A stretch of 64,000 bases of DNA from Botryllus schlosseri (Eukaryota): positions 9,176,001-9,240,000 of the forward strand of contig CM119386.1 of the NCBI GenBank assembly GCA_051294905.1, read 5' to 3'. The notes under the pieces are model-generated. The model searched no databases, had not been told where the DNA came from, and saw only the letters and a program-made list of their open reading frames with translations. The translations under genes and the position numbers were made by a program. Below are positions 2,466-37,606 of the stretch, piece after piece. The number at the start of each line of letters is the position of its first letter. Within the stretch, counting starts at the first letter, position 1.

Positions 2466-4856
2466 TGCAACTTTTTAGTGTAACGTTTGTGAAAAATAAA
2501 AGCAGCACTGCAACTTTTGTGAAGAGTAAGTACAACTTTCCACGGATTTGACTGCAGCAGAAACTTGCCCTACTTATTACCGATGCGAGGCTGTTCAGGG
2601 ACACGCACGTCGCACATTCGCACACCTCTAACTCTCTACGTCCGAAAACGTAAACACTAAACACCGTAGGAATGCGAATTTGCATATTTTGCTCACGGTA
2701 TAGTGCTGTAGCATTGTCGCCCGCTAACTTTGCGGTATATTGTAAAACAGTTGAAATGTCGGGAAAGTTGTCCGGTTTTATAATGTCAGTTGTGTCGCGA
2801 GAGTGACGACGTCGTGCATGAACTTCCGGCGCGCCCGCCTGGCGATATTCGTGGGCATTCCGCAATCACAATATATTCTTAGTTTCAATGGGTGTAGTAC
2901 GCGCTTGTGGGGCAGGTTATACATTTCCGTGTCGGCACGATGGTTTTAATTGACATTACACGCATATACGGGTCTCTGTCCGTGGCAAACTCCGGTCGAA
3001 ATATTTGAATGACGACATTGCCGTCTTACAACACGCTCGGTTCTGGCGCGCGTGTCGCTGATTTATGCGGTAATCCGTGAACAAAACCGGTTGTAGAGGC
3101 AGAATGAGCTATTCGCAGAACAGGGCAAGTAGCCAAAAGTTATTTGCGGGCGACAAATGCTAAATAATGAATGTCTTTCACGGCCAGACTGTCAACGTCA
3201 CAACTTTTTTCAATCTCCGGACACGCGATTCCAAAAATAAACCGACCGAACCATTCGAAGAAGCCGTAACCGGCAGTTTTAACGTTGCCTCAAAGTAAAC
3301 AGTTTTTTTTCGGGTGGAGAATTTCAAAGCATATCTAGTGTCGACAGTCGCGTTTCAGTTGGAAATGGTCATCCGTCCAATTTTCGTGAGGGACTTGCTT
3401 TCGGTGGGATAGTCGCGGGCGTGATTGCAATACGTGGTGACGGGCGCGAGGTCAATCTGGGGCCACGCCTGTACTGGTTATTACTAGGATATGAGACGTT
3501 CTATATTTAGCTATGCCTGAACATGGAGCGGTGTAATCTAAACGTCTACTGGACAGTACTTTTATATAATGACGTGTACAGTCACGAATAGCTTGCATGT
3601 ATTTGAAGGTAATCTTTCATTTTCGTGTGCCGCTAACTTGCATACCGCATCCCATCGTTTCTTTTGGATCCTTCCGCGTGGCGTTCTGCATGGCTGGATT
3701 CTAAACGCATGAATTCGAGTCATACATCCAATGTGACGCCACCATGCTCCTGTATATCCAGTTTATCCACACTAGGAGATAGGTGGTCGGAAAATTGCTC
3801 GACGTTATCCCGTTTGCCCATCGCGCCATCACTTCATCGCCCCTGTTATATATAGGCCAGTACCTATACCCCATTCCTATTTTATAATGTCGCCGTTCCA
3901 GCACCGCATCGAATTATTAGAAATATATTTTAACCGGATGGCAGCATGATCAATTGTTCCTTATTCAATGGTCATTGTTCGTTCATGCACCCAGTTTGGC
4001 ACAAGGCTTGTACAGTACAATGTACAATGTACATGGAAGTCCGTAATTATAACGTATGTCTGAATCTGAGTTTAATTTAATATGACACTGCTCACGTTAC
4101 GCTTTACGCTTACGTGTAAAATGCAGTCATTGCAGCAGATGTTTTTGTCACTGTAACACTGCAATCCCCCGTAGCTAGCGCTAAACCGCGCCCTGCGCAC
4201 ACCGCCCATTGGGTTTTTAGCGTTTGAAAATCAATGCAAAATGTCGATGTCGGAACACCCGATCCCTAATCATCGCAATCAAATCCGCGCTGTCGCAGGC
4301 TACATTTATCAGGCCTAAAGACGCTGATATGTGCGTGTTGCCTGGATTAGTCATACCAATGGCTGGGCTAAGTCGAAATCGAGTATCTGGGTGATCCGAT
4401 TTTAAGTCTAGCATCACCTTCAAGTCTCAGTATCCGATTATTCATGACACTTGAAAGGTTCGAATATGTATCTCTTTTACGACGCCACAAGGAACATGAT
4501 GTCAGTTACGCGTCATCCGAAATAATTTTGTTTTTCTGGACCGTGACTATTTCCCAGCGCTTTGTGATTGTGAGGGTCGATCAGTCCTTGGCAGATAAAT
4601 AATGCCGTGAATACCAGTAGCCTTGAACAATATCTTTCAAATTACTGTACTACGGCTAAAGGTTTGGAGTCTCCAACCGTGGAAATTCTGTGTTGAAACT
4701 GTATTTTTCGTTGCAAAAATAGTAATCTCATCTGAAGGCGTTTATTTTCGCGACTCGAATAGTTACAATTGATACTCGAGGGGCCCTAACTTTAACCCTA
4801 GCGTACGCAAGACATGCGTTTTTTTAACTTTGAGTAAATGTTGACTGGTTTGACAG

Positions 4857-4950
4857 TTCAAGCGCATTCTCAACCGGGAGCTGAACCACCTGTCTGAGAC
4901 GAGCAAGTCCGGGAATCAAGTTTCAGAATTCATCTCCTCGTACTATCTCG
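4857..4950 (+). CDS. PDE4: PDE4-family cAMP phosphodiesterase, UCR2 C-terminal exon (94 bp; upstream exons lie outside the window)
   Basis: tttgacag|TTC...CTC G|gtgagt; translates [31 protein letters not shown](D), matching the PDE4 UCR2 motif [27 protein letters not shown]; same 94-bp size as the vertebrate exon. Not in the ORF track. Confidence 0.96.
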
Positions 4951-4999
4951 GTGAGTGCTTTTTCGTATATGTGTCCTGACGTCACTATTGTAGGCCGCG

Positions 5000-28924: not shown

Positions 28925-31900
28925 GTTTAGATCGAAGCCTGCTTCTGTTTGGTATACAAGTCTCGTAGAGTTCATATGCAAATCATTCTCCCCTGGGCCA
29001 TTCAACATGAACAATATTGATACTCATCCGCCCTACTTGCGATATCAAAGCGCCAGGTAGTTGAAGACAATAAGCTACAATTACACGAATGTTTCAAACG
29101 CTTTATAAAAGCGATTAGCTCCTTTCTCCGATAGCCATCATAGTGTGGGAAAAGGCACAGCTATGCTGGCTTGCTGGCTAGTCTAATCAGCGTCTTGTCC
29201 CAATGTTACGTAAATGGAGGCTACCCGTCAGCCTCTAACATTGTGTAAAGATTGTACAGTACACCTGTGTATGTAGCAATGTGATCATTTGTAATATTGT
29301 AACTGGGAGAAAACCCTGGTCTGCAGCATGTTACAACTTGTATCCGTGTCTAATGACATTTATTGTGGCCCCTGTCGCTTCTTCAGTCGCACTGGTATTT
29401 GTTTGCCACACGCAGCAAACACGGCCATCGTGGTTAATGTCAGGATAATCGCCGTATTTGCGATCTCGATTTTGAGTGCCCGTGACGTATGTACGGTTAC
29501 TGGTAATTATTACGAGTACATCCTTGTGGAATTAAGCTAATTAGCGGAACAGAAGACAACTAGACGGCCGAGAAATAAGCTCTTGCACGCAAGTACCATT
29601 TCGTGTGCTAACCAGGCTACGCCGCGACACTTAATCGCGGTTGGCTCAGCTATTTCTTATGCGCGTAATTGATTTGATTACGAAATTTCTGCGAAATTAT
29701 GTTATTTTGATGGGGATGTCGCTGTTCTTTCATCGTTGTGGTTTTCTTTTGTGTAGTCCCGCGTTCTCACCCGTGGGCGAATTAAAAAGGGGGTAAGTGG
29801 GTTCTTGAGGTCTTCATTCCTTTCGAGTTAGTTTATTCACGTTCCACCTGAAATGTATACTCTTCATTTTTTCTGCACTTCAAAATAATCAAGGTACGCT
29901 ATTTCGACAAACAAATTTTGGATGCCGACCTTTGTGAACCCTGCCGATGACGCACATTCGTGGCGGTGACTTCCCAACCCCTCGCGAACGATATGTTTGT
30001 CGGTACTTTCTAGCGCATGCGCGTTGAGTCGGTGCATATTTCAATGCGCTCTCAGCTGACCATCGTCTTGGAAATGACGAGATTGATTTTTCGCATTGAA
30101 ACGTTGCGTCATTAAATCATTATTCGTTTCGACTATTGTGTTCTTAATCTCCGGATTGTACGAATACCGCAAGGTTTGCGGCACTTATCAATTTTGCTGT
30201 AATAACATCCCCATTAAGCTATAAATTTTTCTCTGGAACGTAGTAGTCACACGGACGCTGTCTCAGCCTATGAATTTTTTCACGTATTGACAAAAAGCTG
30301 ATAAAACCATACAATATCGCGGTCGTGAGTAATTTTCGCAGCTATAGGTTTCGGTGTTGCTAAGCTACTAACTGGGCTGGACTGTGTCAACGATTATCCG
30401 CGCGCGCCAGTCTATGTAGCATGAAAAATCGGTTCGCTTTTCCGTGAAACCTACGTCACAGCGCTATGACAAGCTCGCCGCGCTGCGTTGCCTAAGGAAA
30501 TGTAACTTCGTGTCAGACCAAGTCAGCGCGCGCCTTCGCGGTATGACAAAATTGATTTATTTGGTTGTCACTGGATTGCATTAGGACGCTTGCGATACTC
30601 GCAACTTGCGTAGGACTACATAAACGTAAGATTTCTAGCGTGCGGCGCTGGTGTTGAATTGTCGAAATTTTCGTTTGGCTCTTTTTGCACTCCGAGGATG
30701 TCTTGACGCCGTGACTTTGCGGTATTCTGTTTATCTTGTCGTGTAGAGAAAGGCTGTCCAGATCTTGTTAGTTTCGACACAGATATACGCTGCTGCTTGT
30801 GTATGAGGAGTTTGTGGTCATAAAACACCTTAATTTAGCAACACCTTAATTTAGCCTAATAATGTCTGCGGATTCTCTTCTCTCATTCGGCCCCATAGGT
30901 GACATTGGGCATTGTTTGCCGTTATGGACATGATAAGTGTATTTGGAAAATGCGGTTTACGTGAACTACGTGCCTGAAACGGAATTGATCAGCAGTACGA
31001 TATTTTGACCAATGTCCGCATTATTCCCAGACTTTTTTTCTGCTCGGCAGAGTGAGGTTGCAATCAGTGACGATCGCGTGTAGTTTCAAACAATGCAGGC
31101 TGTTATTAGCGCATTTTCAAATTTTCCTTTGTCAATTGACATTTGCACCAAACCTAAAATTTGGAATTCCATCTCCGGCTGTTACGTTACGCTGCCGAGG
31201 TATTACTTGCGATGTCGCTTCGAGTATGATTGGGCATTATTACAATATATTTCGATATGCTAATAATTCAAATTAGCCGCCTTAATAAGTTTCGAGTGTC
31301 GGGGACGCAGTGGCGAGATATTTCCTGCGCGCTATAATGTGTTTTCGAGCACGTCGTTTATGTTAGGAATGCGGACGATTCGAAATTCCTGTGCCAGCGC
31401 CGATTCCGGCAGTTACAGGCGTTAACCCGTAATCAGATTTCGGCGTAGTTTGCGCGGTGATCGTCTATTTTGAAGTTGAATTTCACTATTTGTGGCAATG
31501 ACTTCTGTTTCGACAAGCTGGTTTCGCGATGAACGGTTGGGAAATTTTCATTGCAAGTAATCCGACTTTCCATGCAGTCTCTGGTTCTGTGAAATTCGCA
31601 AACTTCAACTGCCACACAATGCGCTCGGTCCGGTCAACAAGTTGTCACTATGCGGTCTTTCGTTTCCGTAACTACCCGATGCCATGTGAATTTTAATACG
31701 AAAGTCCACTTGGCTGTGTTTCTTCGCGCTAGTGTTAGAATCATCATTGGTTGATTAGCAATTTAGAATTAGAATCGGGTCCCTTGGTGACTACTTTACA
31801 CCAGAATGAAGTTGGACGATGTTTTCACTTCTCTAGTAACTGCTGACGATTACTTCTGACGAATGCCAGCCGAAAATGTTCGAGACTATTTCAATACGAA

Positions 31901-32261
31901 TATTTTATTCAATTGTATAATGAAGACTCTTGAGCTACAAACTTGGAGTGTGGTTTTCATTACGTACCTCTGTTGGTTTTCAGTTGCTGATAATTAGTAC
32001 AGTTTCAATGTCGATCACCTGCCGAATTCCGATCCGCTGAGAAGCAGTAGTACTGTGTGAGCGTCTGTAGTGCGATATCGCGTTAGTATATCTTGCAGCA
32101 GGCCCAGGTATTTGCTTAGCATCTGCACTACACTGAACGCTTCCTACGTCGCCATCGCTCTTCCTCGCTTTGTCTCGCTCTCTCTGTTGTCTCGCGGCGC
32201 TCACTTTTGACCGCGTCCCGTCTCTTGCCTTTCTCCGCTCGTCCCGAGCGAGAGACTGTTA

Positions 32262-32269
32262 TGACGTCA
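32262..32269. promoter_or_regulatory. Canonical CRE (TGACGTCA) in the candidate intronic promoter of the alternative PDE4 exon
   Basis: Perfect palindrome 437 bp upstream of ATG 32706, next to a CT-rich, CpG-rich tract (about 32150-32250). Function is inferred. Confidence 0.4.
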
Positions 32270-32705
32270 ATGGCTCGATCCTTTTCCGGGTGTATAGCCA
32301 GCTATATGATTACAGCCAGGCCAAGCGACACTTTCATATGCTTAGCGCTCTCGCAAGCGATGGCCGTGTTTTGTGCTAAGGCAGTTAGTGGATATAATAG
32401 GTTTGAATTAGTTTATGGAGGAAACGGAATAATATATTCGTATTGAAAGAACGGCTAACACTCTTCAGGAATAATCTCTACTGGTTGCTGATGAAAATAT
32501 TCGGGTTTATTTCGAAAAGAATATATTATTAAATTGTATTATGAAGTACTGTACCCTTTAAGAGTCTCTTTATCAAGGCGGTACGGTTGATTTAATCAGG
32601 GTTGTATTCCGTTTGAGATACTTTGTCGAGGCAGTGCAGCGGATTTAATCCTACCTCCTTTGCGATTTGGTAGATATTTTCAACGAGTTAAATGTTAGCT
32701 AAGTC

Positions 32706-33345
32706 ATGCAATTTTGCGACATGGTGATAAAATATTTCGCGAGCCTGAAGCGATCGGATACGGACGACCGTTACTTGACGACGGAAGAGTGGGATCGTAT
32801 ATCTCGCGGGAAAACCGCCAAGGACGCGTACCCGGTGCCGGGCAGCTCTAAACGGCCGCGATCCGCGCACAGCTCGAAAAAATCAAAGTCCTCTATGGCT
32901 GTGTGTGTAGCCGGCAGGCGGCATAGTGAACAGTTTACGGCGGCTGCGCTGAAAAGGCGCGTGTCGCAATCCAGAAACTTATCCGCCAGCACGCAGCACA
33001 GGCGGTCGTCGCTACCCACGTCAACGGCGGACGATATTATAAATAACAACGTCTCGTGCTCCAACGGCACGGCCGCTATTTCGCAACAGGACTTGATAGC
33101 GAAGGCGGCGGAATATCACGCGAACAGGATATGCGCACATATATCGGCCATAGCGTCGGCGCTTGACAAAGACACGTACTTTGCCGGGGACAGTATCAAC
33201 GCGTCTTGGAACGCTAAAACGCGGTCGTTTACAGTGCAGTTTTTGAAAGACCCGCGCGCAAACGGGAAAGCGGCGCCCGTACTGGAGGGATGTAAAAACG
33301 GATGTGTTAAGCACTGTTACTGCTACGAACCGAACAATTTACCTA
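32706..33345 (+). CDS. PDE4: Candidate alternative first coding exon of PDE4 (213 codons, phase 1)
   Basis: Long ORF 32706-33494 with in-frame TAA at 32700 just upstream of the ATG; donor CCTA|gtacgt after 33345 gives phase 1, in frame with the 33675 exon; coding-like GC-rich sequence that turns AT-rich after the donor. Confidence 0.68.
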
Positions 33346-33674
33346 GTACGTACACATTTCTTAGAAATTACGCTGCTAATCTACACAGAAGCCGGACTTT
33401 GAGCGCGTTGTCACTAATATTGAATATGTCACAATTTCGAAAATTGAACTCACTTCGGGGTATGCACATGATTTCGAATAAAACGGTAGAGTAGCTGTTT
33501 CTAGACAAAATTGGTTGCTTATTATCTGATAACGGACATCTCCGGAAGCGTCGGGATAGAAATTTAGAATGTTACATCATAATCCGCCCGTAACTCTACA
33601 CTCCAATTTTCCGCGATCCGCGATAAAGCTGTATGTTCATCGGGCGGTGTGGTATAAACCTCTGTTATTTCCAG

Positions 33675-33818
33675 ATCACCATCAAGATGACATGATGAGC
33701 GCTGCCGACGAGCAGAAGCGTTCGTCCTCGCCTAACCACGCGGCCGTGTCGACGCAAAAGCCGAACAAGGACGGATACGTCGTGAAGCCCGAGAGCAGAG
33801 TGATGGGTAACGTAACGG
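33675..33818 (+). CDS. PDE4: PDE4 exon, linker region LR2, part 1 (144 bp, phase 1-1)
   Basis: ttatttccag|AT CAC...ACG G|gtgagt; (D)HHQDDMMSAADEQK...SRVMGNVT(G), end aligns with PDE4 RPMSQISG; frame-compatible with 4857-4950. Confidence 0.85.
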
Positions 33819-33879
33819 GTGAGTTTACTTTGTCATTTGGTTCCGGGCAGACGTGGAATATTGTGAATATATTTGACAG

Positions 33880-33977
33880 GCATCAAAGCGTCGAAGCATA
33901 TCAGAGACGCGGTGAGGAATTTGAAAACGGTTCCCACGTTTGGCGTCACTGTCAGCAACGAAGCCGTGCTGGCCGAG
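33880..33977 (+). CDS. PDE4: PDE4 exon, LR2 part 2 (98 bp)
   Basis: atttgacag|GC ATC...GCC GAG|gtatgt; GIKASKHIRDAVRNLKTVPTFGVTVSNEAVLAE aligns with PDE4 GVKK...IPRFGVKTEQEDVLAK. Confidence 0.92.
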
Positions 33978-34222
33978 GTATGTTTGCGTCTGTTTGATTT
34001 ACGTTATGTATCTCTGTTTTCCTGTTGTTGCACTTTACGTTAGTGCGTGGTTTAATACTTTTAAAACAAAACATTGTTGTTGGTTCGGGGTCAATATGTG
34101 GGAAAAGCTTTATCTCGGCGGCACATGTTTGCTTTGAGATCGGTTCGTGTTTGTACCGGGGATTGTTGATCCTTAGCTTGCGTGTGTCGGAATTGAAAGT
34201 AATTCGTCGCGTTTTATTGCAG

Positions 34223-34324
34223 GAACTCAAGGATATTGACCAGTGGGGCGGCGTGAATCTGTTCAAAGTAGCTGACATCAGCAACGGAAGGCCTTTGGTC
34301 TCTGTGCTGTATCAAATAATGAAA
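34223..34324 (+). CDS. PDE4: PDE4 catalytic domain exon (102 bp)
   Basis: ttattgcag|GAA...ATG AAA|gtaagt; ELKDIDQWGGVNLFKVADISNGRPLVSVLYQIMK. Confidence 0.95.
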
Positions 34325-34550
34325 GTAAGTGTCGGATCATAATTATCGGTCACGTGCTACATGTTCATTATTCATTCTTTCCCTACAACTATGCGCTCCG
34401 TCCTTTATGCATATTTTCATACGAATTATATTTTATTGCCCTTAGCCCTTGTATACAGCGCACAAGAATGATGTATTGTTATATTTGGCGGTCTATAACT
34501 TAATTTTATGTTATCATTATTTGCGATAACCGGGATGTATTGACTCCTAG

Positions 34551-34712
34551 AAACGGGATTTCTTCAACCAGTACCAAATCTCCGCCCAAAAATGTCTCGC
34601 CTATGCCATGACGCTGGAGGACCATTACCGGCACGTGCCCTACCACAACAGCATCCACGCCGCGGACGTGCTACAGTCTGTCCACGTCCTGCTGTCGTCT
34701 GCCGCGCTGGAT
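34551..34712 (+). CDS. PDE4: PDE4 catalytic exon with YHNxxH motif (162 bp)
   Basis: ctcctag|AAA CGG...CTG GAT|gtaagt; KRDFFNQYQISAQKCLAYAMTLEDHYRHVPYHNSIHAADVLQSVHVLLSSAALD. Confidence 0.97.
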
Positions 34713-34880
34713 GTAAGTTATTTTCTTTGTTGATTGCTATCGATCTATCGATTGGTCGTTCTGATACGTGCCGGGACATATCACGATTGTGAACCGCAAT
34801 TGCTGTGACATGAGTAGATAGCTGTTGCGTCATGCGTCTCGCGTACTCGTGCCTAACCGCCTCTGATGTGTTTTTGACAG

Positions 34881-34980
34881 AACGTGTTTACTGACATCGA
34901 GATCTTGGCGGCACTTTTTGCAAGCGCTATGCACGACGTTGACCACCCGGGTCTCAACAACCAGTTTCATTGTGCTATAA
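34881..34980 (+). CDS. PDE4: PDE4 catalytic exon with HDxDHPG signature (100 bp)
   Basis: tttttgacag|AAC GTG...ATA A|gtaagt; [33 protein letters not shown]. Confidence 0.97.
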
Positions 34981-35124
34981 GTAAGTTTGTTCGGTGATCA
35001 TTTATTAGTCGCGTTATGTGAGCTTTGACCTTCATCTCGGTTTTTACTGATCCTGTTGGGTTTGGAATTGCGAATCCGCTGATAAATCAGTTGACGTGGT
35101 CGAGGTAACATCGTAAATCTGTAC

Positions 35125-35305
35125 TCAATTACAAGTAAGAAGTAGAGAATTCCTATTGTAAGGGAAATTGTAAGTAGTCAAGGTCTGTTTTCGTCCTAAC
35201 ACGGAAAACTGTCGAGTAGAAGTAGCATTAGCGTCGTCTATTTGTACTTAACTGCAAGTAGAAGTAGATATTTTCAAGCAGTAATTAAAAGATCAAGTAT
35301 TCAAG
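35125..35305 (+). repeat. AAGTAG-rich degenerate repeat, probably MITE-derived; similar tracts at about 13652-13795, 20950-21045, 36100-36510 and 37130-37196
   Basis: Clusters of CAAGTA/GAAGTAG/CGAGTAGAAGTA motifs; termini and TSDs not resolvable. Confidence 0.55.
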
Positions 35306-35630
35306 GGTGGAAAAATAAGAATTAGTTCGTTACCAACCGCATCTGCAAACCAGTGCTGTCTGTGACACGAAACCGTGGATCTGGACTGGTATCTAGATAG
35401 AGTTGCGTCTGCCGCGAAGTCTGCCTATCCGTGTAAATTGCGGCAGATTCTATTTTGCGACGTTATGTAACGGTCTGTCATGAATAATTGATGCACAAGC
35501 GTGTAAATCCCGCAACTTAGCGCTGAGTAGTATTTCGTGACGGCCGTCATGATTCAACGAAAAGCACCGCGTTCAGACTTGTTTTGCTTCGTTTCCTGGC
35601 CATTACATTCACAGCCGCCTTTGCTTTCAG

Positions 35631-35785
35631 GGAGCGAACTAGCAATCATGTACAACGACGAATCAGTGCTCGAGAACCACCATCTCGCCGTCGGCTTCAA
35701 GCTGATGCAGCTGCCCGACTGCGACCTGTTCGAGAACCTGACCAAAAAGCAATGGCAGAGCTTCAGGAAGACTGTCATCGACATG
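35631..35785 (+). CDS. PDE4: PDE4 catalytic exon (155 bp)
   Basis: gctttcag|GG AGC...GAC ATG|gtgaga; (R)[51 protein letters not shown]. Confidence 0.97.
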
Positions 35786-36541
35786 GTGAGATTGCTGAGA
35801 TAGCCTTCGGGGCCGTCGCGGTCCGATGGTCTTTTGACGTCAATCGGTATCTTCATGGGATTTTCGAGCTGCCTTTGCGGCGCGCGGCATCGCGATAATC
35901 CCGGCCGTACGCAAATTAGATGATATTTAGATTGTTTTCCGAGTGCGCTGGGGATTTATCTTTTAAATAATGATGCACGCGCCGGTAATCTGTTTATCGG
36001 GTTTGCCGACGCGGAATCAATACTACCGGACGGGTTGAAATAGGTACGCTCGAGAATATCTTTCGCGGTTCAAACGGGTTCGTTTCGCCTTCCAAACTCA
36101 AATAGTCAAAGTAGCCGAGTAGAAGTAATGTCAATTCCTATTCGAATATATGTATCGATTTCCACGACATTCCCAAATTGCTTCAATTAGAAGTAGGAAT
36201 GAAAGGACTGGCAAGTAATCAAGTGAGCACGTGGTCGCGTCATTCGTTAGGAAATCGAAAACGAATGCTTTCGAAAATGCAAGCTGTAACTACTGCGAGC
36301 GATTTTCGAAAATATGTTCTGCTAAGACGATGCAGTGGCTATTTCGACCAGTTGGCAGTTGCTATGATAATTCCGCTCGCGAAAGTGATAAAATCCAATC
36401 CTGAAGCTATTTTCTACTAACAATATCACAAGTCTAACTTGTGAAGTAGAAGTGAAAACGGTCTAAAAACAGTCACTTAAGGCAAGTAATCCTCGAAAAA
36501 CGTAGTTAAGTACTTTTTTACTGACCGCCTCTTGTTTCCAG

Positions 36542-36847
36542 GTCCTCGCGACGGACATGTCGAAGCACATGCAGCTGCTGGCCAACCTGAAGACCATGGT
36601 CGAGACGAAGAAGGTGGCCACGTCCGGCGTGCTCATGCTGGACAACTACACGGACCGCATCCAGGTGCTGCAGAATATGATCCACTGCGCCGACCTCAGC
36701 AACCCCACCAAGCCGCTCGACTTGTACCGCGGCTGGAATCAGCGCGTGATGAACGAGTACTGGCTTCAAGGCGATGTGGAACGCGAACGCGGCATCGAGA
36801 TAAGCCCGATGTGCGACAGACACACGGCTTCAGTTGAAAGATCTCAG
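36542..36847 (+). CDS. PDE4: PDE4 catalytic exon (306 bp, equal to two vertebrate exons fused)
   Basis: tgtttccag|GTC CTC...TCT CAG|gtgtgt; VLATDMSKH...[39 protein letters not shown]...[16 protein letters not shown]. Confidence 0.97.
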
Positions 36848-36949
36848 GTGTGTGTTGATGACTTTATATTCCGGCGTGTGACGACGCTTTGGATTTGAGT
36901 CTTTTGAGTTTTGATCGACTCGGAGGTAATGTGAGTTTATTGCTTGCAG

Positions 36950-37080
36950 GTTATTTTCATCGATTATATTGCCTACCCGTTGTGGGAGACTTGGGCCGAC
37001 CTTGTGAACCCGTGCGCGCAGGACATTGTCGAACAACTCGTGCAGAACAGAGAATGGTACAGTCTGCAACTACCTGACAG
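36950..37080 (+). CDS. PDE4: PDE4 catalytic domain C-terminal exon (131 bp)
   Basis: tgcttgcag|GTT ATT...GAC AG|gtacgt; [43 protein letters not shown](S). Confidence 0.96.
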
Positions 37081-37395
37081 GTACGTATCAATACTAGTGC
37101 GAGGATTGAGTGAAAAAAACTGAAAACTAAAATAGAAGTAGGCTGAACTTAGTTTAGTGGTCCGAAAAAGTAGAAGTACTTCGTTACCGACCACTTCGGG
37201 TTCGAGAACTCGAATCATTGTAACCAGCCGCACCTGGTCGTGACGTATTTGAGATATGTGTGGTCACGGTTTCCTAAATTTTGGATTCGAAGTAGTTGCC
37301 CAGACGCTTTTGAATCAAAGACATTACGAGTAAACTTGATACAACCAAATACTTCAATGTTCGATCATCCGTGACGCTGTTCCTTCGCTTTGCAG

Positions 37396-37606
37396 CCCGT
37401 CGCCGGTGCCCGAAGACGTCAACGACAGCGACACGCCTGAGGCTAGCCCCGAGTCCAACCTCACCCCGCAGCCGCGCGACCCTGACTCCAAGTTCCAGTT
37501 TCCCATGGACGAGGAGGCGCCAGATCGCGGTGCAGTGCCGAGCATCACCACCGAGGACACGGACCACGGCCAGACCCAGGTCCGAGAAGCTGTGTCAGGA
37601 CGATGA
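37396..37606 (+). CDS. PDE4: PDE4 last coding exon with stop codon
   Basis: cgctttgcag|C CCG TCG...CGA TGA; (S)PSPVPEDVND...DSKFQFPMDEE...SGR*. The PDSP ERK-type site and FQF docking motif match the PDE4 C-terminus. Confidence 0.93.

What the first reader, a model, noticed from the sequence alone, without database searches (positions are those of the whole stretch)
32150..33675. Candidate PDE4 isoform lacking both UCR1 and UCR2, with its own 213-aa regulatory N-terminus
Seen: exon 32706-33345 lies downstream of the last UCR2 exon and splices in frame to LR2 and the catalytic domain. It encodes three RR-x-S motifs (RRHS, RRVS, RRSS), a basic cluster (KRPRSAHSSKKSK) and a terminal CxxxCxxHCxC motif (CKNGCVKHCYC); a CRE lies 437 bp upstream. 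Known: vertebrate long, short and super-short PDE4 forms keep at least the C-terminal part of UCR2, which caps the active site, and PKA activation acts through RRES in UCR1; RRxS is the PKA consensus. Inference: a UCR-free, cAMP-inducible PDE4 with a replacement PKA-responsive, possibly metal-binding or palmitoylated, targeting module. I do not recognise it from described PDE4 classes.
Basis: partly seen in the sequence, partly recalled or inferred. Interest (0 to 1): 0.72.

Follow-up and report, generated by a model that had tools for sequence, protein, structure and literature searches.

The report
UCR-free PDE4 isoform in sea squirts
A sea-squirt cAMP phosphodiesterase (PDE4) gene really makes an abundant transcript that starts inside the gene, skips both standard regulatory regions (UCR1, UCR2) and replaces them with a conserved 213-residue N-terminus of unknown fold; no published PDE4 isoform class fits it.

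Summary
The ORF 32706-33345 is a single-copy, transcribed exon of the genome's only UCR-bearing PDE4 gene. It lies 27.7 kb downstream of the last UCR2 exon (4857-4950). The splice 33345>33675 (GT..AG) appears in RNA-derived contigs from three independent studies, and none of those contigs has an upstream splice. The exon is in frame with nine further exons and gives a 682-aa protein with a complete catalytic domain and no UCR1 or UCR2.

The module is conserved. It is 79%, 57% and about 30% identical in three other species. One is the Styela clava RefSeq model "PDE4D-like isoform X12", so the window comes from a tunicate (inferred). In the two species with genomic contigs the exon sits directly upstream of the LR2 exon. 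dN/dS is 0.085. An RRxSxP site, two helix histidines and an HCYCY.P motif are invariant. The upstream CRE lies in a noncoding block that is also conserved.

By contig depth the form is about as abundant as all UCR2-containing forms together.

cAMP induction, PKA or 14-3-3 control and metal binding remain inferences. The fold prediction was poor. This is a new variant of a known kind. It is present in RefSeq as an automatic model but I found no description of it in the literature.

The parts
4857..4950 (+). Last UCR2 exon (UCR2c; [31 protein letters not shown] plus G, phase 1). It is spliced directly to 33675 in the UCR-containing forms.
   Evidence: Pfam PDE4_UCR positions 85-118. AG/GT borders read. 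Its last 30 nt appear as the loose end in front of 33675 in contigs of X1 and X3.
32153..32424 (+). Conserved noncoding block upstream of the exon, a candidate promoter or enhancer. It contains CRE TGACGTCA 32262-32269, TTCCGGGTGTA 32284-32294 (ETS-like core), GCTATATGATTAC 32301-32313 and ATATAAT 32393-32399.
   Evidence: It aligns at 60-65% with L004 81-385, while the rest of the flank does not align. The CRE is exact in both species. A low-depth X4 contig covers 32149-32371. Promoter function is inferred.
32672..32705 (+). Minimal transcribed 5' UTR. Contigs start at 32672 (X3) and 32691 (X4). The true start is not mapped.
   Evidence: table 8. There are no loose letters or upstream joints at these contig ends. 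The 18 nt before the ATG are conserved with L004.
32706..33345 (+). Coding part of the alternative first exon: a 213-aa N-terminal module plus 1 nt. It has an N-terminal helix, a basic Ser-rich stretch predicted disordered with RRHS, RRVS and RRSSLP, then a helix plus strands with invariant His and Cys.
   Evidence: transcribed and spliced; homologues; dN/dS 0.085; invariant columns; fold model.
33346..33674 (+). 329-nt GT..AG intron removed between the alternative first exon and the LR2 exon.
   Evidence: Joint 33345>33675 in X1, X3 and X4. The equivalent intron is about 580 nt in L004 and 226 nt in L005.
33675..33818 (+). First common exon (LR2: HHQDDMMSAADEQKRSS...). It accepts either the UCR2c exon or the alternative first exon, both in phase 1.
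33880..37606 (+). Remaining common exons, giving the complete catalytic domain and C-terminus with stop TGA at 37604-37606: 33880-33977, 34223-34324, 34551-34712, 34881-34980, 35631-35785, 36542-36847, 36950-37080, 37396-37606.
   Evidence: Joints 33818>33880 and 33977>34223 are seen in RNA contigs. The other borders are GT/AG sites chosen by colinearity with Styela isoform X12.

Best explanation
Shown: an internal transcription start in the intron between the last UCR2 exon and the LR2 exon of a tunicate's single PDE4 gene produces an mRNA. Its first exon (coding 32706-33345) is spliced to the common exons at 33675. The product is a 682-aa PDE4 with a full catalytic domain, LR2 and C-terminus, but no UCR1 and no UCR2.

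What the absences imply (inferred from vertebrate PDE4 biochemistry):
- The UCR1 PKA site is missing.
- The UCR1/UCR2 dimerisation module is missing.
- The UCR2 helix that caps the active site is missing.
- The enzyme should therefore be monomeric, uncapped and not activated in the classical way.

What replaces them: a conserved 213-aa module.
- A short N-terminal hydrophobic helix.
- About 110 residues of basic, Ser-rich sequence predicted disordered. It carries three RRxS sites, and the third is an invariant RRxSxP, which fits both a PKA/AGC-kinase site and a 14-3-3 site.
- An about 80-residue helix-plus-sheet part with invariant His and Cys (H138, H145, H203, C204, C206).

Most likely role of the module (inferred): an isoform-specific targeting and phospho-switch region, as N-termini are in other PDE4 isoforms. 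The conserved CRE-containing block upstream may give cAMP-dependent feedback expression, like the intronic promoters of vertebrate short forms.
For: - Splice 33345>33675 in contigs of three runs from three studies. Those contigs end 15-34 nt before the ATG with no upstream joint.
- UCR2c maps to 4857-4950 and is joined directly to 33675 in the other form.
- Colinear mapping of the 717-aa Styela clava isoform X12 gives ten GT-AG exons and 682 aa. Identity is 56% in the module, 45% in LR2, 87.5% in the catalytic domain and 39% in the C-terminus.
- Styela X12 has PDEase_I positions 1-238 of 238 and no UCR match.
- Only three true homologues were found in 1.84 billion representatives. Each is a PDE4 N-terminus or sits just before an LR2 exon.
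- dN/dS is 0.085 with saturated dS, and nucleotide similarity stops at the exon borders.
- Invariant columns are listed. RRxS is enriched.
- The CRE block is conserved.
- Contig depths for novel exon versus the UCR2c-to-LR2 contig are 12.4 versus 14.2 (X3) and 74.4 versus 48 (X4).
- The exon is single copy.
- Vertebrate isoform classes: PMC2929239, PMC11820465, PMC10707411.
Against: - The transcription start is not mapped. The raw-read run gave only 7 reads, and the X1 contig runs unspliced back to 31968, which may be pre-mRNA.
- Contigs cannot phase the first exon to the 3' end and they drop rare variants.
- The runs are only guessed to be RNA, although spliced joints argue for cDNA.
- Contig depths are a poor measure of expression.
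- There is no protein-level evidence.
- The module has no Pfam, PDB or Atlas relative. Its AlphaFold model is poor (mean pLDDT 38.7, best stretch 50-60), so the claims of disorder, a fold and zinc binding are weak.
- Only one of the three RRxS sites is conserved in the most distant homologue.
- CREs are frequent genome-wide.
Confidence: 0.82

Rival explanations
1. The module is a functional replacement for UCR2. It folds back on the catalytic domain in cis and gates the active site, and phosphorylation of the RRxS cluster relieves or enforces the block. This is the reader's 'replacement PKA-responsive regulatory module' in its strong form.
For: The module is more conserved than LR2 or the C-terminus. 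It has a long conserved amphipathic helix at 127-152 with invariant residues. The clustered RRxS sites lie just upstream of that helix.
Against: There is no sequence similarity to UCR2 and no structural evidence. The fold model has low confidence. N-termini of known PDE4 isoforms mostly act in targeting (PMC2929239).
Confidence: 0.15
2. The exon is also, or mainly, a cassette inserted between UCR2c and LR2 in UCR-containing forms. An acceptor AG at 32702-32703 would give a 642-nt exon that stays in frame (...YYL-V-MQFCD...).
For: The sequence shows that the frame is preserved, because both UCR2c and the exon end in phase 1. The AG is also present in L004.
Against: Contigs in X3 and X4 run colinear with the genome across 32704 back to 32672 and 32691, with no branch or loose end. 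The acceptor has no pyrimidine tract. An in-frame TAA precedes the ATG. The Styela model starts at the same Met. Contigs can miss rare variants, so minor use is not excluded.
Confidence: 0.05
3. The transcript is a by-product of an intronic promoter or enhancer with no protein function.
For: No protein-level data exist. The start site is unmapped.
Against: dN/dS is 0.085 over 212 codons while the flanks have diverged beyond alignment. The ORF, the donor and the position next to LR2 are kept in four species down to about 30% identity. Contig depth is comparable to the UCR-containing forms.
Confidence: 0.02

Closest known systems
Styela clava XP_039273346 '3',5'-cyclic-AMP phosphodiesterase 4D-like isoform X12' (automatic RefSeq model, 717 aa)
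   Same: It is the orthologous isoform. It starts with the same Met-Gln-Phe-Cys-Asp, has the module at 57% identity joined directly to N-HQDDMM (LR2), has a full PDEase_I domain and has no UCR.
   Different: It comes from another species and is a computed model without a published description. It has small insertions in the basic and Cys regions.
[quoted passage not shown]
   Same: They also use an internal start, have a unique N-terminus, lack UCR1 and have a complete catalytic domain.
   Different: Their 5' exons lie between UCR2a and UCR2b, or they start inside UCR2b, so they keep the C-terminal part of UCR2 (PMC2929239). Here the 5' exon lies after UCR2c and no UCR2 residue upstream of LR2 is kept. 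The unique N-terminus is 213 aa. From memory, the vertebrate ones are about 15-25 aa.
Dead-short PDE4A7
   Same: It lacks both UCR1 and UCR2 (PMC11820465, PMC10707411).
   Different: Dead-short forms have a truncated catalytic unit, are inactive and are known only as mRNA (PMC10707411). Here all catalytic exons and metal-binding motifs are present.
cAMP-induced intronic promoter of vertebrate PDE4D1/PDE4D2 short forms
   Same: An intronic promoter drives a non-long form. Prolonged cAMP elevation induces PDE4D1 and PDE4D2 (PMC10707411). A conserved full CRE lies upstream here.
   Different: Induction has not been tested here. The promoter sits at a different domain junction. CREs are common in this genome.

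Membership tests
PDE4 (cAMP-specific class I phosphodiesterase) | Complete PDEase_I catalytic domain with the His/Asp metal-binding motifs | tested here: met
   PF00233 matches on exons at window 34875-36904. The motifs YHNSIHAADV, HDVDHPG and DMSKH are present. The assembled isoform is 87.5% identical to the Styela catalytic domain, which matches PF00233 positions 1-238 of 238.
PDE4 (cAMP-specific class I phosphodiesterase) | The gene carries UCR1/UCR2 (PDE4_UCR), the family signature | tested here: met
   PF18100 matches only at this locus in the genome, at window 4848-4949 and about 4 kb before the window. The gene is a PDE4. The isoform itself lacks the UCRs.
PDE4 super-short class | Retains the C-terminal part of UCR2 (UCR2b/c, including the ...[10 protein letters not shown]... 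helix) | tested here: not met
   The first exon lies 27.7 kb downstream of UCR2c and splices to the LR2 exon. The Styela orthologue has no PDE4_UCR match.
PDE4 dead-short class (PDE4A7) | Lacks UCR1 and UCR2 | tested here: met
PDE4 dead-short class (PDE4A7) | Truncated, inactive catalytic unit | tested here: not met
   All catalytic exons are colinear with a full-length orthologue and the reading frame is open to the stop at 37604. Enzymatic activity itself cannot be tested with these tools.
PKA-regulated PDE4 (long-form type) | PKA phosphorylation of an RRxS site changes activity | not testable with these tools
   The module has three RRxS sites, and RRxSxP at 99-104 is invariant in four species. 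This is a motif only. UCR1 with its own site is absent from the isoform.
Zinc-binding Cys/His mini-domain | Four conserved ligands in a folded unit | tested here: inconclusive
   H138, H145, H203, C204 and C206 are invariant. C196 and C200 are not conserved in P0003. The AlphaFold model has pLDDT 50-60 at best. There is no Pfam or PDB match.

The most novel reading that the evidence does not exclude
Ascidians have evolved a fifth PDE4 isoform class. It is a catalytically complete enzyme that has discarded the whole UCR1/UCR2 control system. It is governed instead by a lineage-specific module: a Cys/His (possibly zinc) mini-domain plus a PKA/14-3-3 phospho-switch. That module sets activity or location, and a conserved CRE promoter closes a cAMP feedback loop. 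This would show that the UCR system is not obligatory for regulated PDE4 function in chordates.
Probability: 0.25. Interest if true: 0.65.

Novelty: new variant of a known kind. Interest (0 to 1): 0.52.

Why it matters
PDE4 regulation and PDE4 drug design are built on the UCR1/UCR2 module, through dimerisation, active-site capping, PKA activation and allosteric inhibitors. The accepted isoform classes all keep part of UCR2 or are inactive.

This is an abundant, conserved, UCR-free but complete PDE4 in the sister group of vertebrates. It offers a natural experiment on what the catalytic unit does without UCRs, and a new N-terminal module whose partners are unknown.

It also shows that non-long PDE4 forms are not confined to tetrapods. 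An earlier survey found only long forms in Ciona (PMC2929239).

Tried and rejected
- Transposon or repeat origin: rejected. There is one copy in 495 Mb by DNA search and by protein profile.
- Family assignment of the module: no hit in Pfam, PDB sequences at E up to 10 or the ESM Atlas.
- More homologues: a profile search and a length-matched search with the Styela N-terminus added nothing beyond the three. The fourth hit (P0004) is a repetitive bacterial protein and is spurious.
- AlphaFold on the 4-sequence alignment: mean pLDDT 38.7. I ran no fold search because the matches would be meaningless.
- Complex prediction of the Styela module (128-224) against its catalytic domain (285-650): no verdict, and no evidence either way.
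- Raw-read RNA run X23: only 7 reads laid, which says nothing about starts.
- Styela genomic locus: not on record in the look-up of encoding contigs.
- The Logan runs behind L004 and L005 could not be tied to species names.
- Read laying stretch: I kept it to 31400-34400 so as not to send the most conserved catalytic exons.
- Drosophila dunce isoform classes (Ruppert et al. 2017) could not be read in the library. I therefore did not check whether insects have a comparable UCR-free form.

Full report
WHAT IS THERE

The window is G000:C16:9176001-9240000 of a 495.5-Mb animal genome. A PDE4 gene runs along the + strand.

- UCR exons. Pfam PDE4_UCR matches only this locus in the whole genome. One match is about 4 kb before the window and one is at window 4848-4949. 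Reading the sequence, the second match is an exon at 4857-4950 with AG and GT borders. It encodes [31 protein letters not shown] plus one G, so it ends in phase 1. This corresponds to the vertebrate UCR2c exon, the last UCR2 exon in the scheme of PMC2929239.
- Catalytic exons. They lie at 34.5-37.1 kb (PDEase_I matches; motifs HAADV, HDVDHPG and DMSKH).
- The candidate exon. The ORF starts at ATG 32706, two codons after an in-frame TAA, and is open through 33345. That is 213 codons plus 1 nt. It is followed by GTACGT. At 33673-33674 an AG precedes the LR2 exon.
- Motifs. Three RRxS in 213 residues compares with 0.14 expected from composition, P about 1.5e-4. They are the only RRxS motifs in the whole 682-aa product.

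IS IT EXPRESSED AND SPLICED AS CLAIMED?

Twenty runs of the same organism hold part of 32150-34000, many with a share of words that fits exons only. I laid three contig runs from three studies and one raw-read RNA run on 31400-34400.

- The joint 33345>33675 (GT..AG, skipping 329 nt) is present in one contig each of X1, X3 and X4.
- The same runs carry the joints 33818>33880 and 33977>34223 of the common exons, so these contigs come from cDNA.
- The contigs carrying the new exon begin at 32672 (X3) and 32691 (X4). They have no extra letters and no upstream joint.
- The X1 contig runs colinear with the genome back to 31968. X1 also has intron-level background of 4-5x, so that contig may merge pre-mRNA with the exon.
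- A second kind of contig ends at 33675 preceded by the last 30 nt of the UCR2c exon, so both forms exist.
- Contig depths, new exon versus UCR2c-to-LR2 contig, are 12.4 versus 14.2 in X3 and 74.4 versus 48 in X4. These are crude numbers, but the UCR-free form is not a rare by-product.
- The raw-read run gave only seven reads and no start-site information.

IS IT A CONSERVED CODING EXON?

- Homologues. HMMER read all 1.84 billion representative proteins and found three true homologues.
  - P0001: 79% identity, on Logan contig L004.
  - P0002: 57% identity, 717 aa.
  - P0003: about 30% identity, on Logan contig L005.
- The named homologue. P0002 is Styela clava XP_039273346, "3',5'-cyclic-AMP phosphodiesterase 4D-like isoform X12". 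It has a complete PDEase_I domain at 370-610 and no UCR match. Its module is joined directly to N-HQDDMM, the start of LR2. I infer from this that the window comes from a tunicate, probably a stolidobranch ascidian. The organism name is coded in the tools.
- Gene architecture. L004 and L005 are genomic or unspliced contigs. In L004 the exon is followed by an intron of about 580 nt and then the LR2 exon. In L005 the exon ends A|GTACGTAT and, 226 nt later, an AG precedes ACCACCAAGATGATATGATG, again the LR2 exon. The exon, its donor, its phase and its place next to LR2 are therefore kept in the window species and both contigs. Styela has the same module-to-LR2 join at protein level.
- Selection. 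Between the window and L004, nucleotide similarity starts 18 nt before the ATG and stops 6 nt after the donor. dN/dS is 0.085 with dS saturated at about 1.7.
- Copy number. The exon is single copy by DNA and by profile search.

THE PRODUCT

Mapping Styela X12 on the window gives ten GT-AG exons and a 682-aa protein ending at TGA 37604-37606.

| Region | Identity to Styela X12 |
|---|---|
| N-terminal module | 56% |
| LR2 region | 45% |
| Catalytic domain | 87.5% |
| C-terminus | 39% |

The isoform has LR2, the full catalytic unit and the C-terminal FQF and SP region. It has no UCR1 and no UCR2 residue upstream of the Asp/Asn codon that spans the junction.

ANATOMY OF THE MODULE

Invariant residues in the four sequences are:
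- M6 and W29;
- R84-R85;
- R99-R100-x-S102-x-P104;
- an Asn run;
- Y137, H138, I142 and H145;
- W168 and T176-V177-Q178;
- H203-C204-Y-C206-Y-x-P209.

RRHS and RRVS are kept in the three closer species only. C196 and C200 are not kept in P0003, which instead has further Cys and His residues after the motif.

AlphaFold with this thin alignment gives mean pLDDT 38.7. It predicts a short N-terminal helix (2-12), no confident structure for 12-125, and a helix (127-152) plus four strands at pLDDT 50-60. Pfam, PDB sequences and the ESM Atlas give nothing.

My reading is inference:
- a targeting and phospho-switch region;
- RRxSxP fits both a PKA/AGC-kinase site and a 14-3-3 site;
- KRPR...KKSK looks like a bipartite nuclear signal;
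- the invariant His and Cys could bind zinc.

UPSTREAM REGION

- TGACGTCA at 32262-32269 is real, but the motif is frequent. There are 14 in the window against 0.93 in shuffles, and about 5.1 per 64 kb in 200 kb of arbitrary loci of this genome. Position alone has roughly a 1-in-10 chance.
- L004 also has an exact TGACGTCA, 360 nt before its homologous ATG.
- Window 32153-32424 aligns with L004 81-385, with near-identical TGACGTCAAT, TTCCGGGTGTA and GCTATATGATTAC and a second ATATAAT element. The rest of the flank does not align. That pattern is what a constrained regulatory block looks like.
- Whether this block is the promoter is open. The X3 and X4 contigs start 350-400 nt downstream of it. 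A separate low-depth X4 contig covers 32149-32371.

COMPARISON WITH WHAT IS KNOWN

- Super-short 5' exons lie between UCR2a and UCR2b, truncated super-short forms start inside UCR2b, and only long forms were found in Ciona (PMC2929239).
- Dead-short forms lack both UCRs, but they have a truncated, inactive catalytic unit and are known only as mRNA (PMC10707411, PMC11820465).
- The present form fits none of these. It has no UCR2 at all and a complete catalytic unit.
- A search for PDE4 and UCR2 together with "ascidian" found no paper. A looser search for phosphodiesterase 4 with tunicate genus names listed only general tunicate papers among its ten listed results.
- The sequence is not unknown to databases, because RefSeq predicts it for Styela.
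- I could not check insect or nematode isoform catalogues.

VERDICT

It is a new variant of a known kind. The functional claims for the module and the CRE are reasonable hypotheses that remain to be tested.

Noticed in passing
window 4977-35842, and the whole window: The full palindromic CRE TGACGTCA occurs 14 times in 64 kb against 0.93 expected from shuffles. Ten of these lie inside the PDE4 gene and eight lie in the UCR2c-LR2 intron. Arbitrary loci of the genome give about 5 per 64 kb, so the motif is over-represented genome-wide and about 2.7-fold more so here. One site sits 27 nt after the UCR2c donor (4977-4984).
   Followed up: partly
window 32702-32704: An AG at 32702-32703 would allow in-frame cassette inclusion (642 nt) of the exon between UCR2c and LR2. 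The contigs laid show no sign of this, and the acceptor has no pyrimidine tract.
   Followed up: partly
window 31905-32512 (run X1): Low-depth X1 contigs have loose ends at 31919, 31925, 32493 and 32512. There is also a backward joint 32510>31905 with 14 inserted letters. These may reflect a haplotype structural variant or a chimeric contig upstream of the exon.
   Followed up: no
window 32149-32371 (run X4): A separate contig at depth 5 covers exactly the conserved CRE/ETS/TATA-like block, although X4 shows no intron background elsewhere. It may be an upstream start or a promoter-associated RNA.
   Followed up: no
window 36950-37606: The C-terminal exons keep an FQF motif (KFQFPM) and an SP pair (LPDSPSP) where vertebrate PDE4s have the ERK docking and phosphorylation sites (the vertebrate comparison is from memory). 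The catalytic domain reads QVIFIDY where vertebrates have QVGFIDY, and Styela shares this.
   Followed up: no
G000 C4:22869001, C13:152065, C2:40282974, C16:3201438 and others: Other PDEase_I loci, meaning other PDE families, exist in the genome. PDE4_UCR matches only the locus of this window, so there is a single PDE4 gene.
   Followed up: partly
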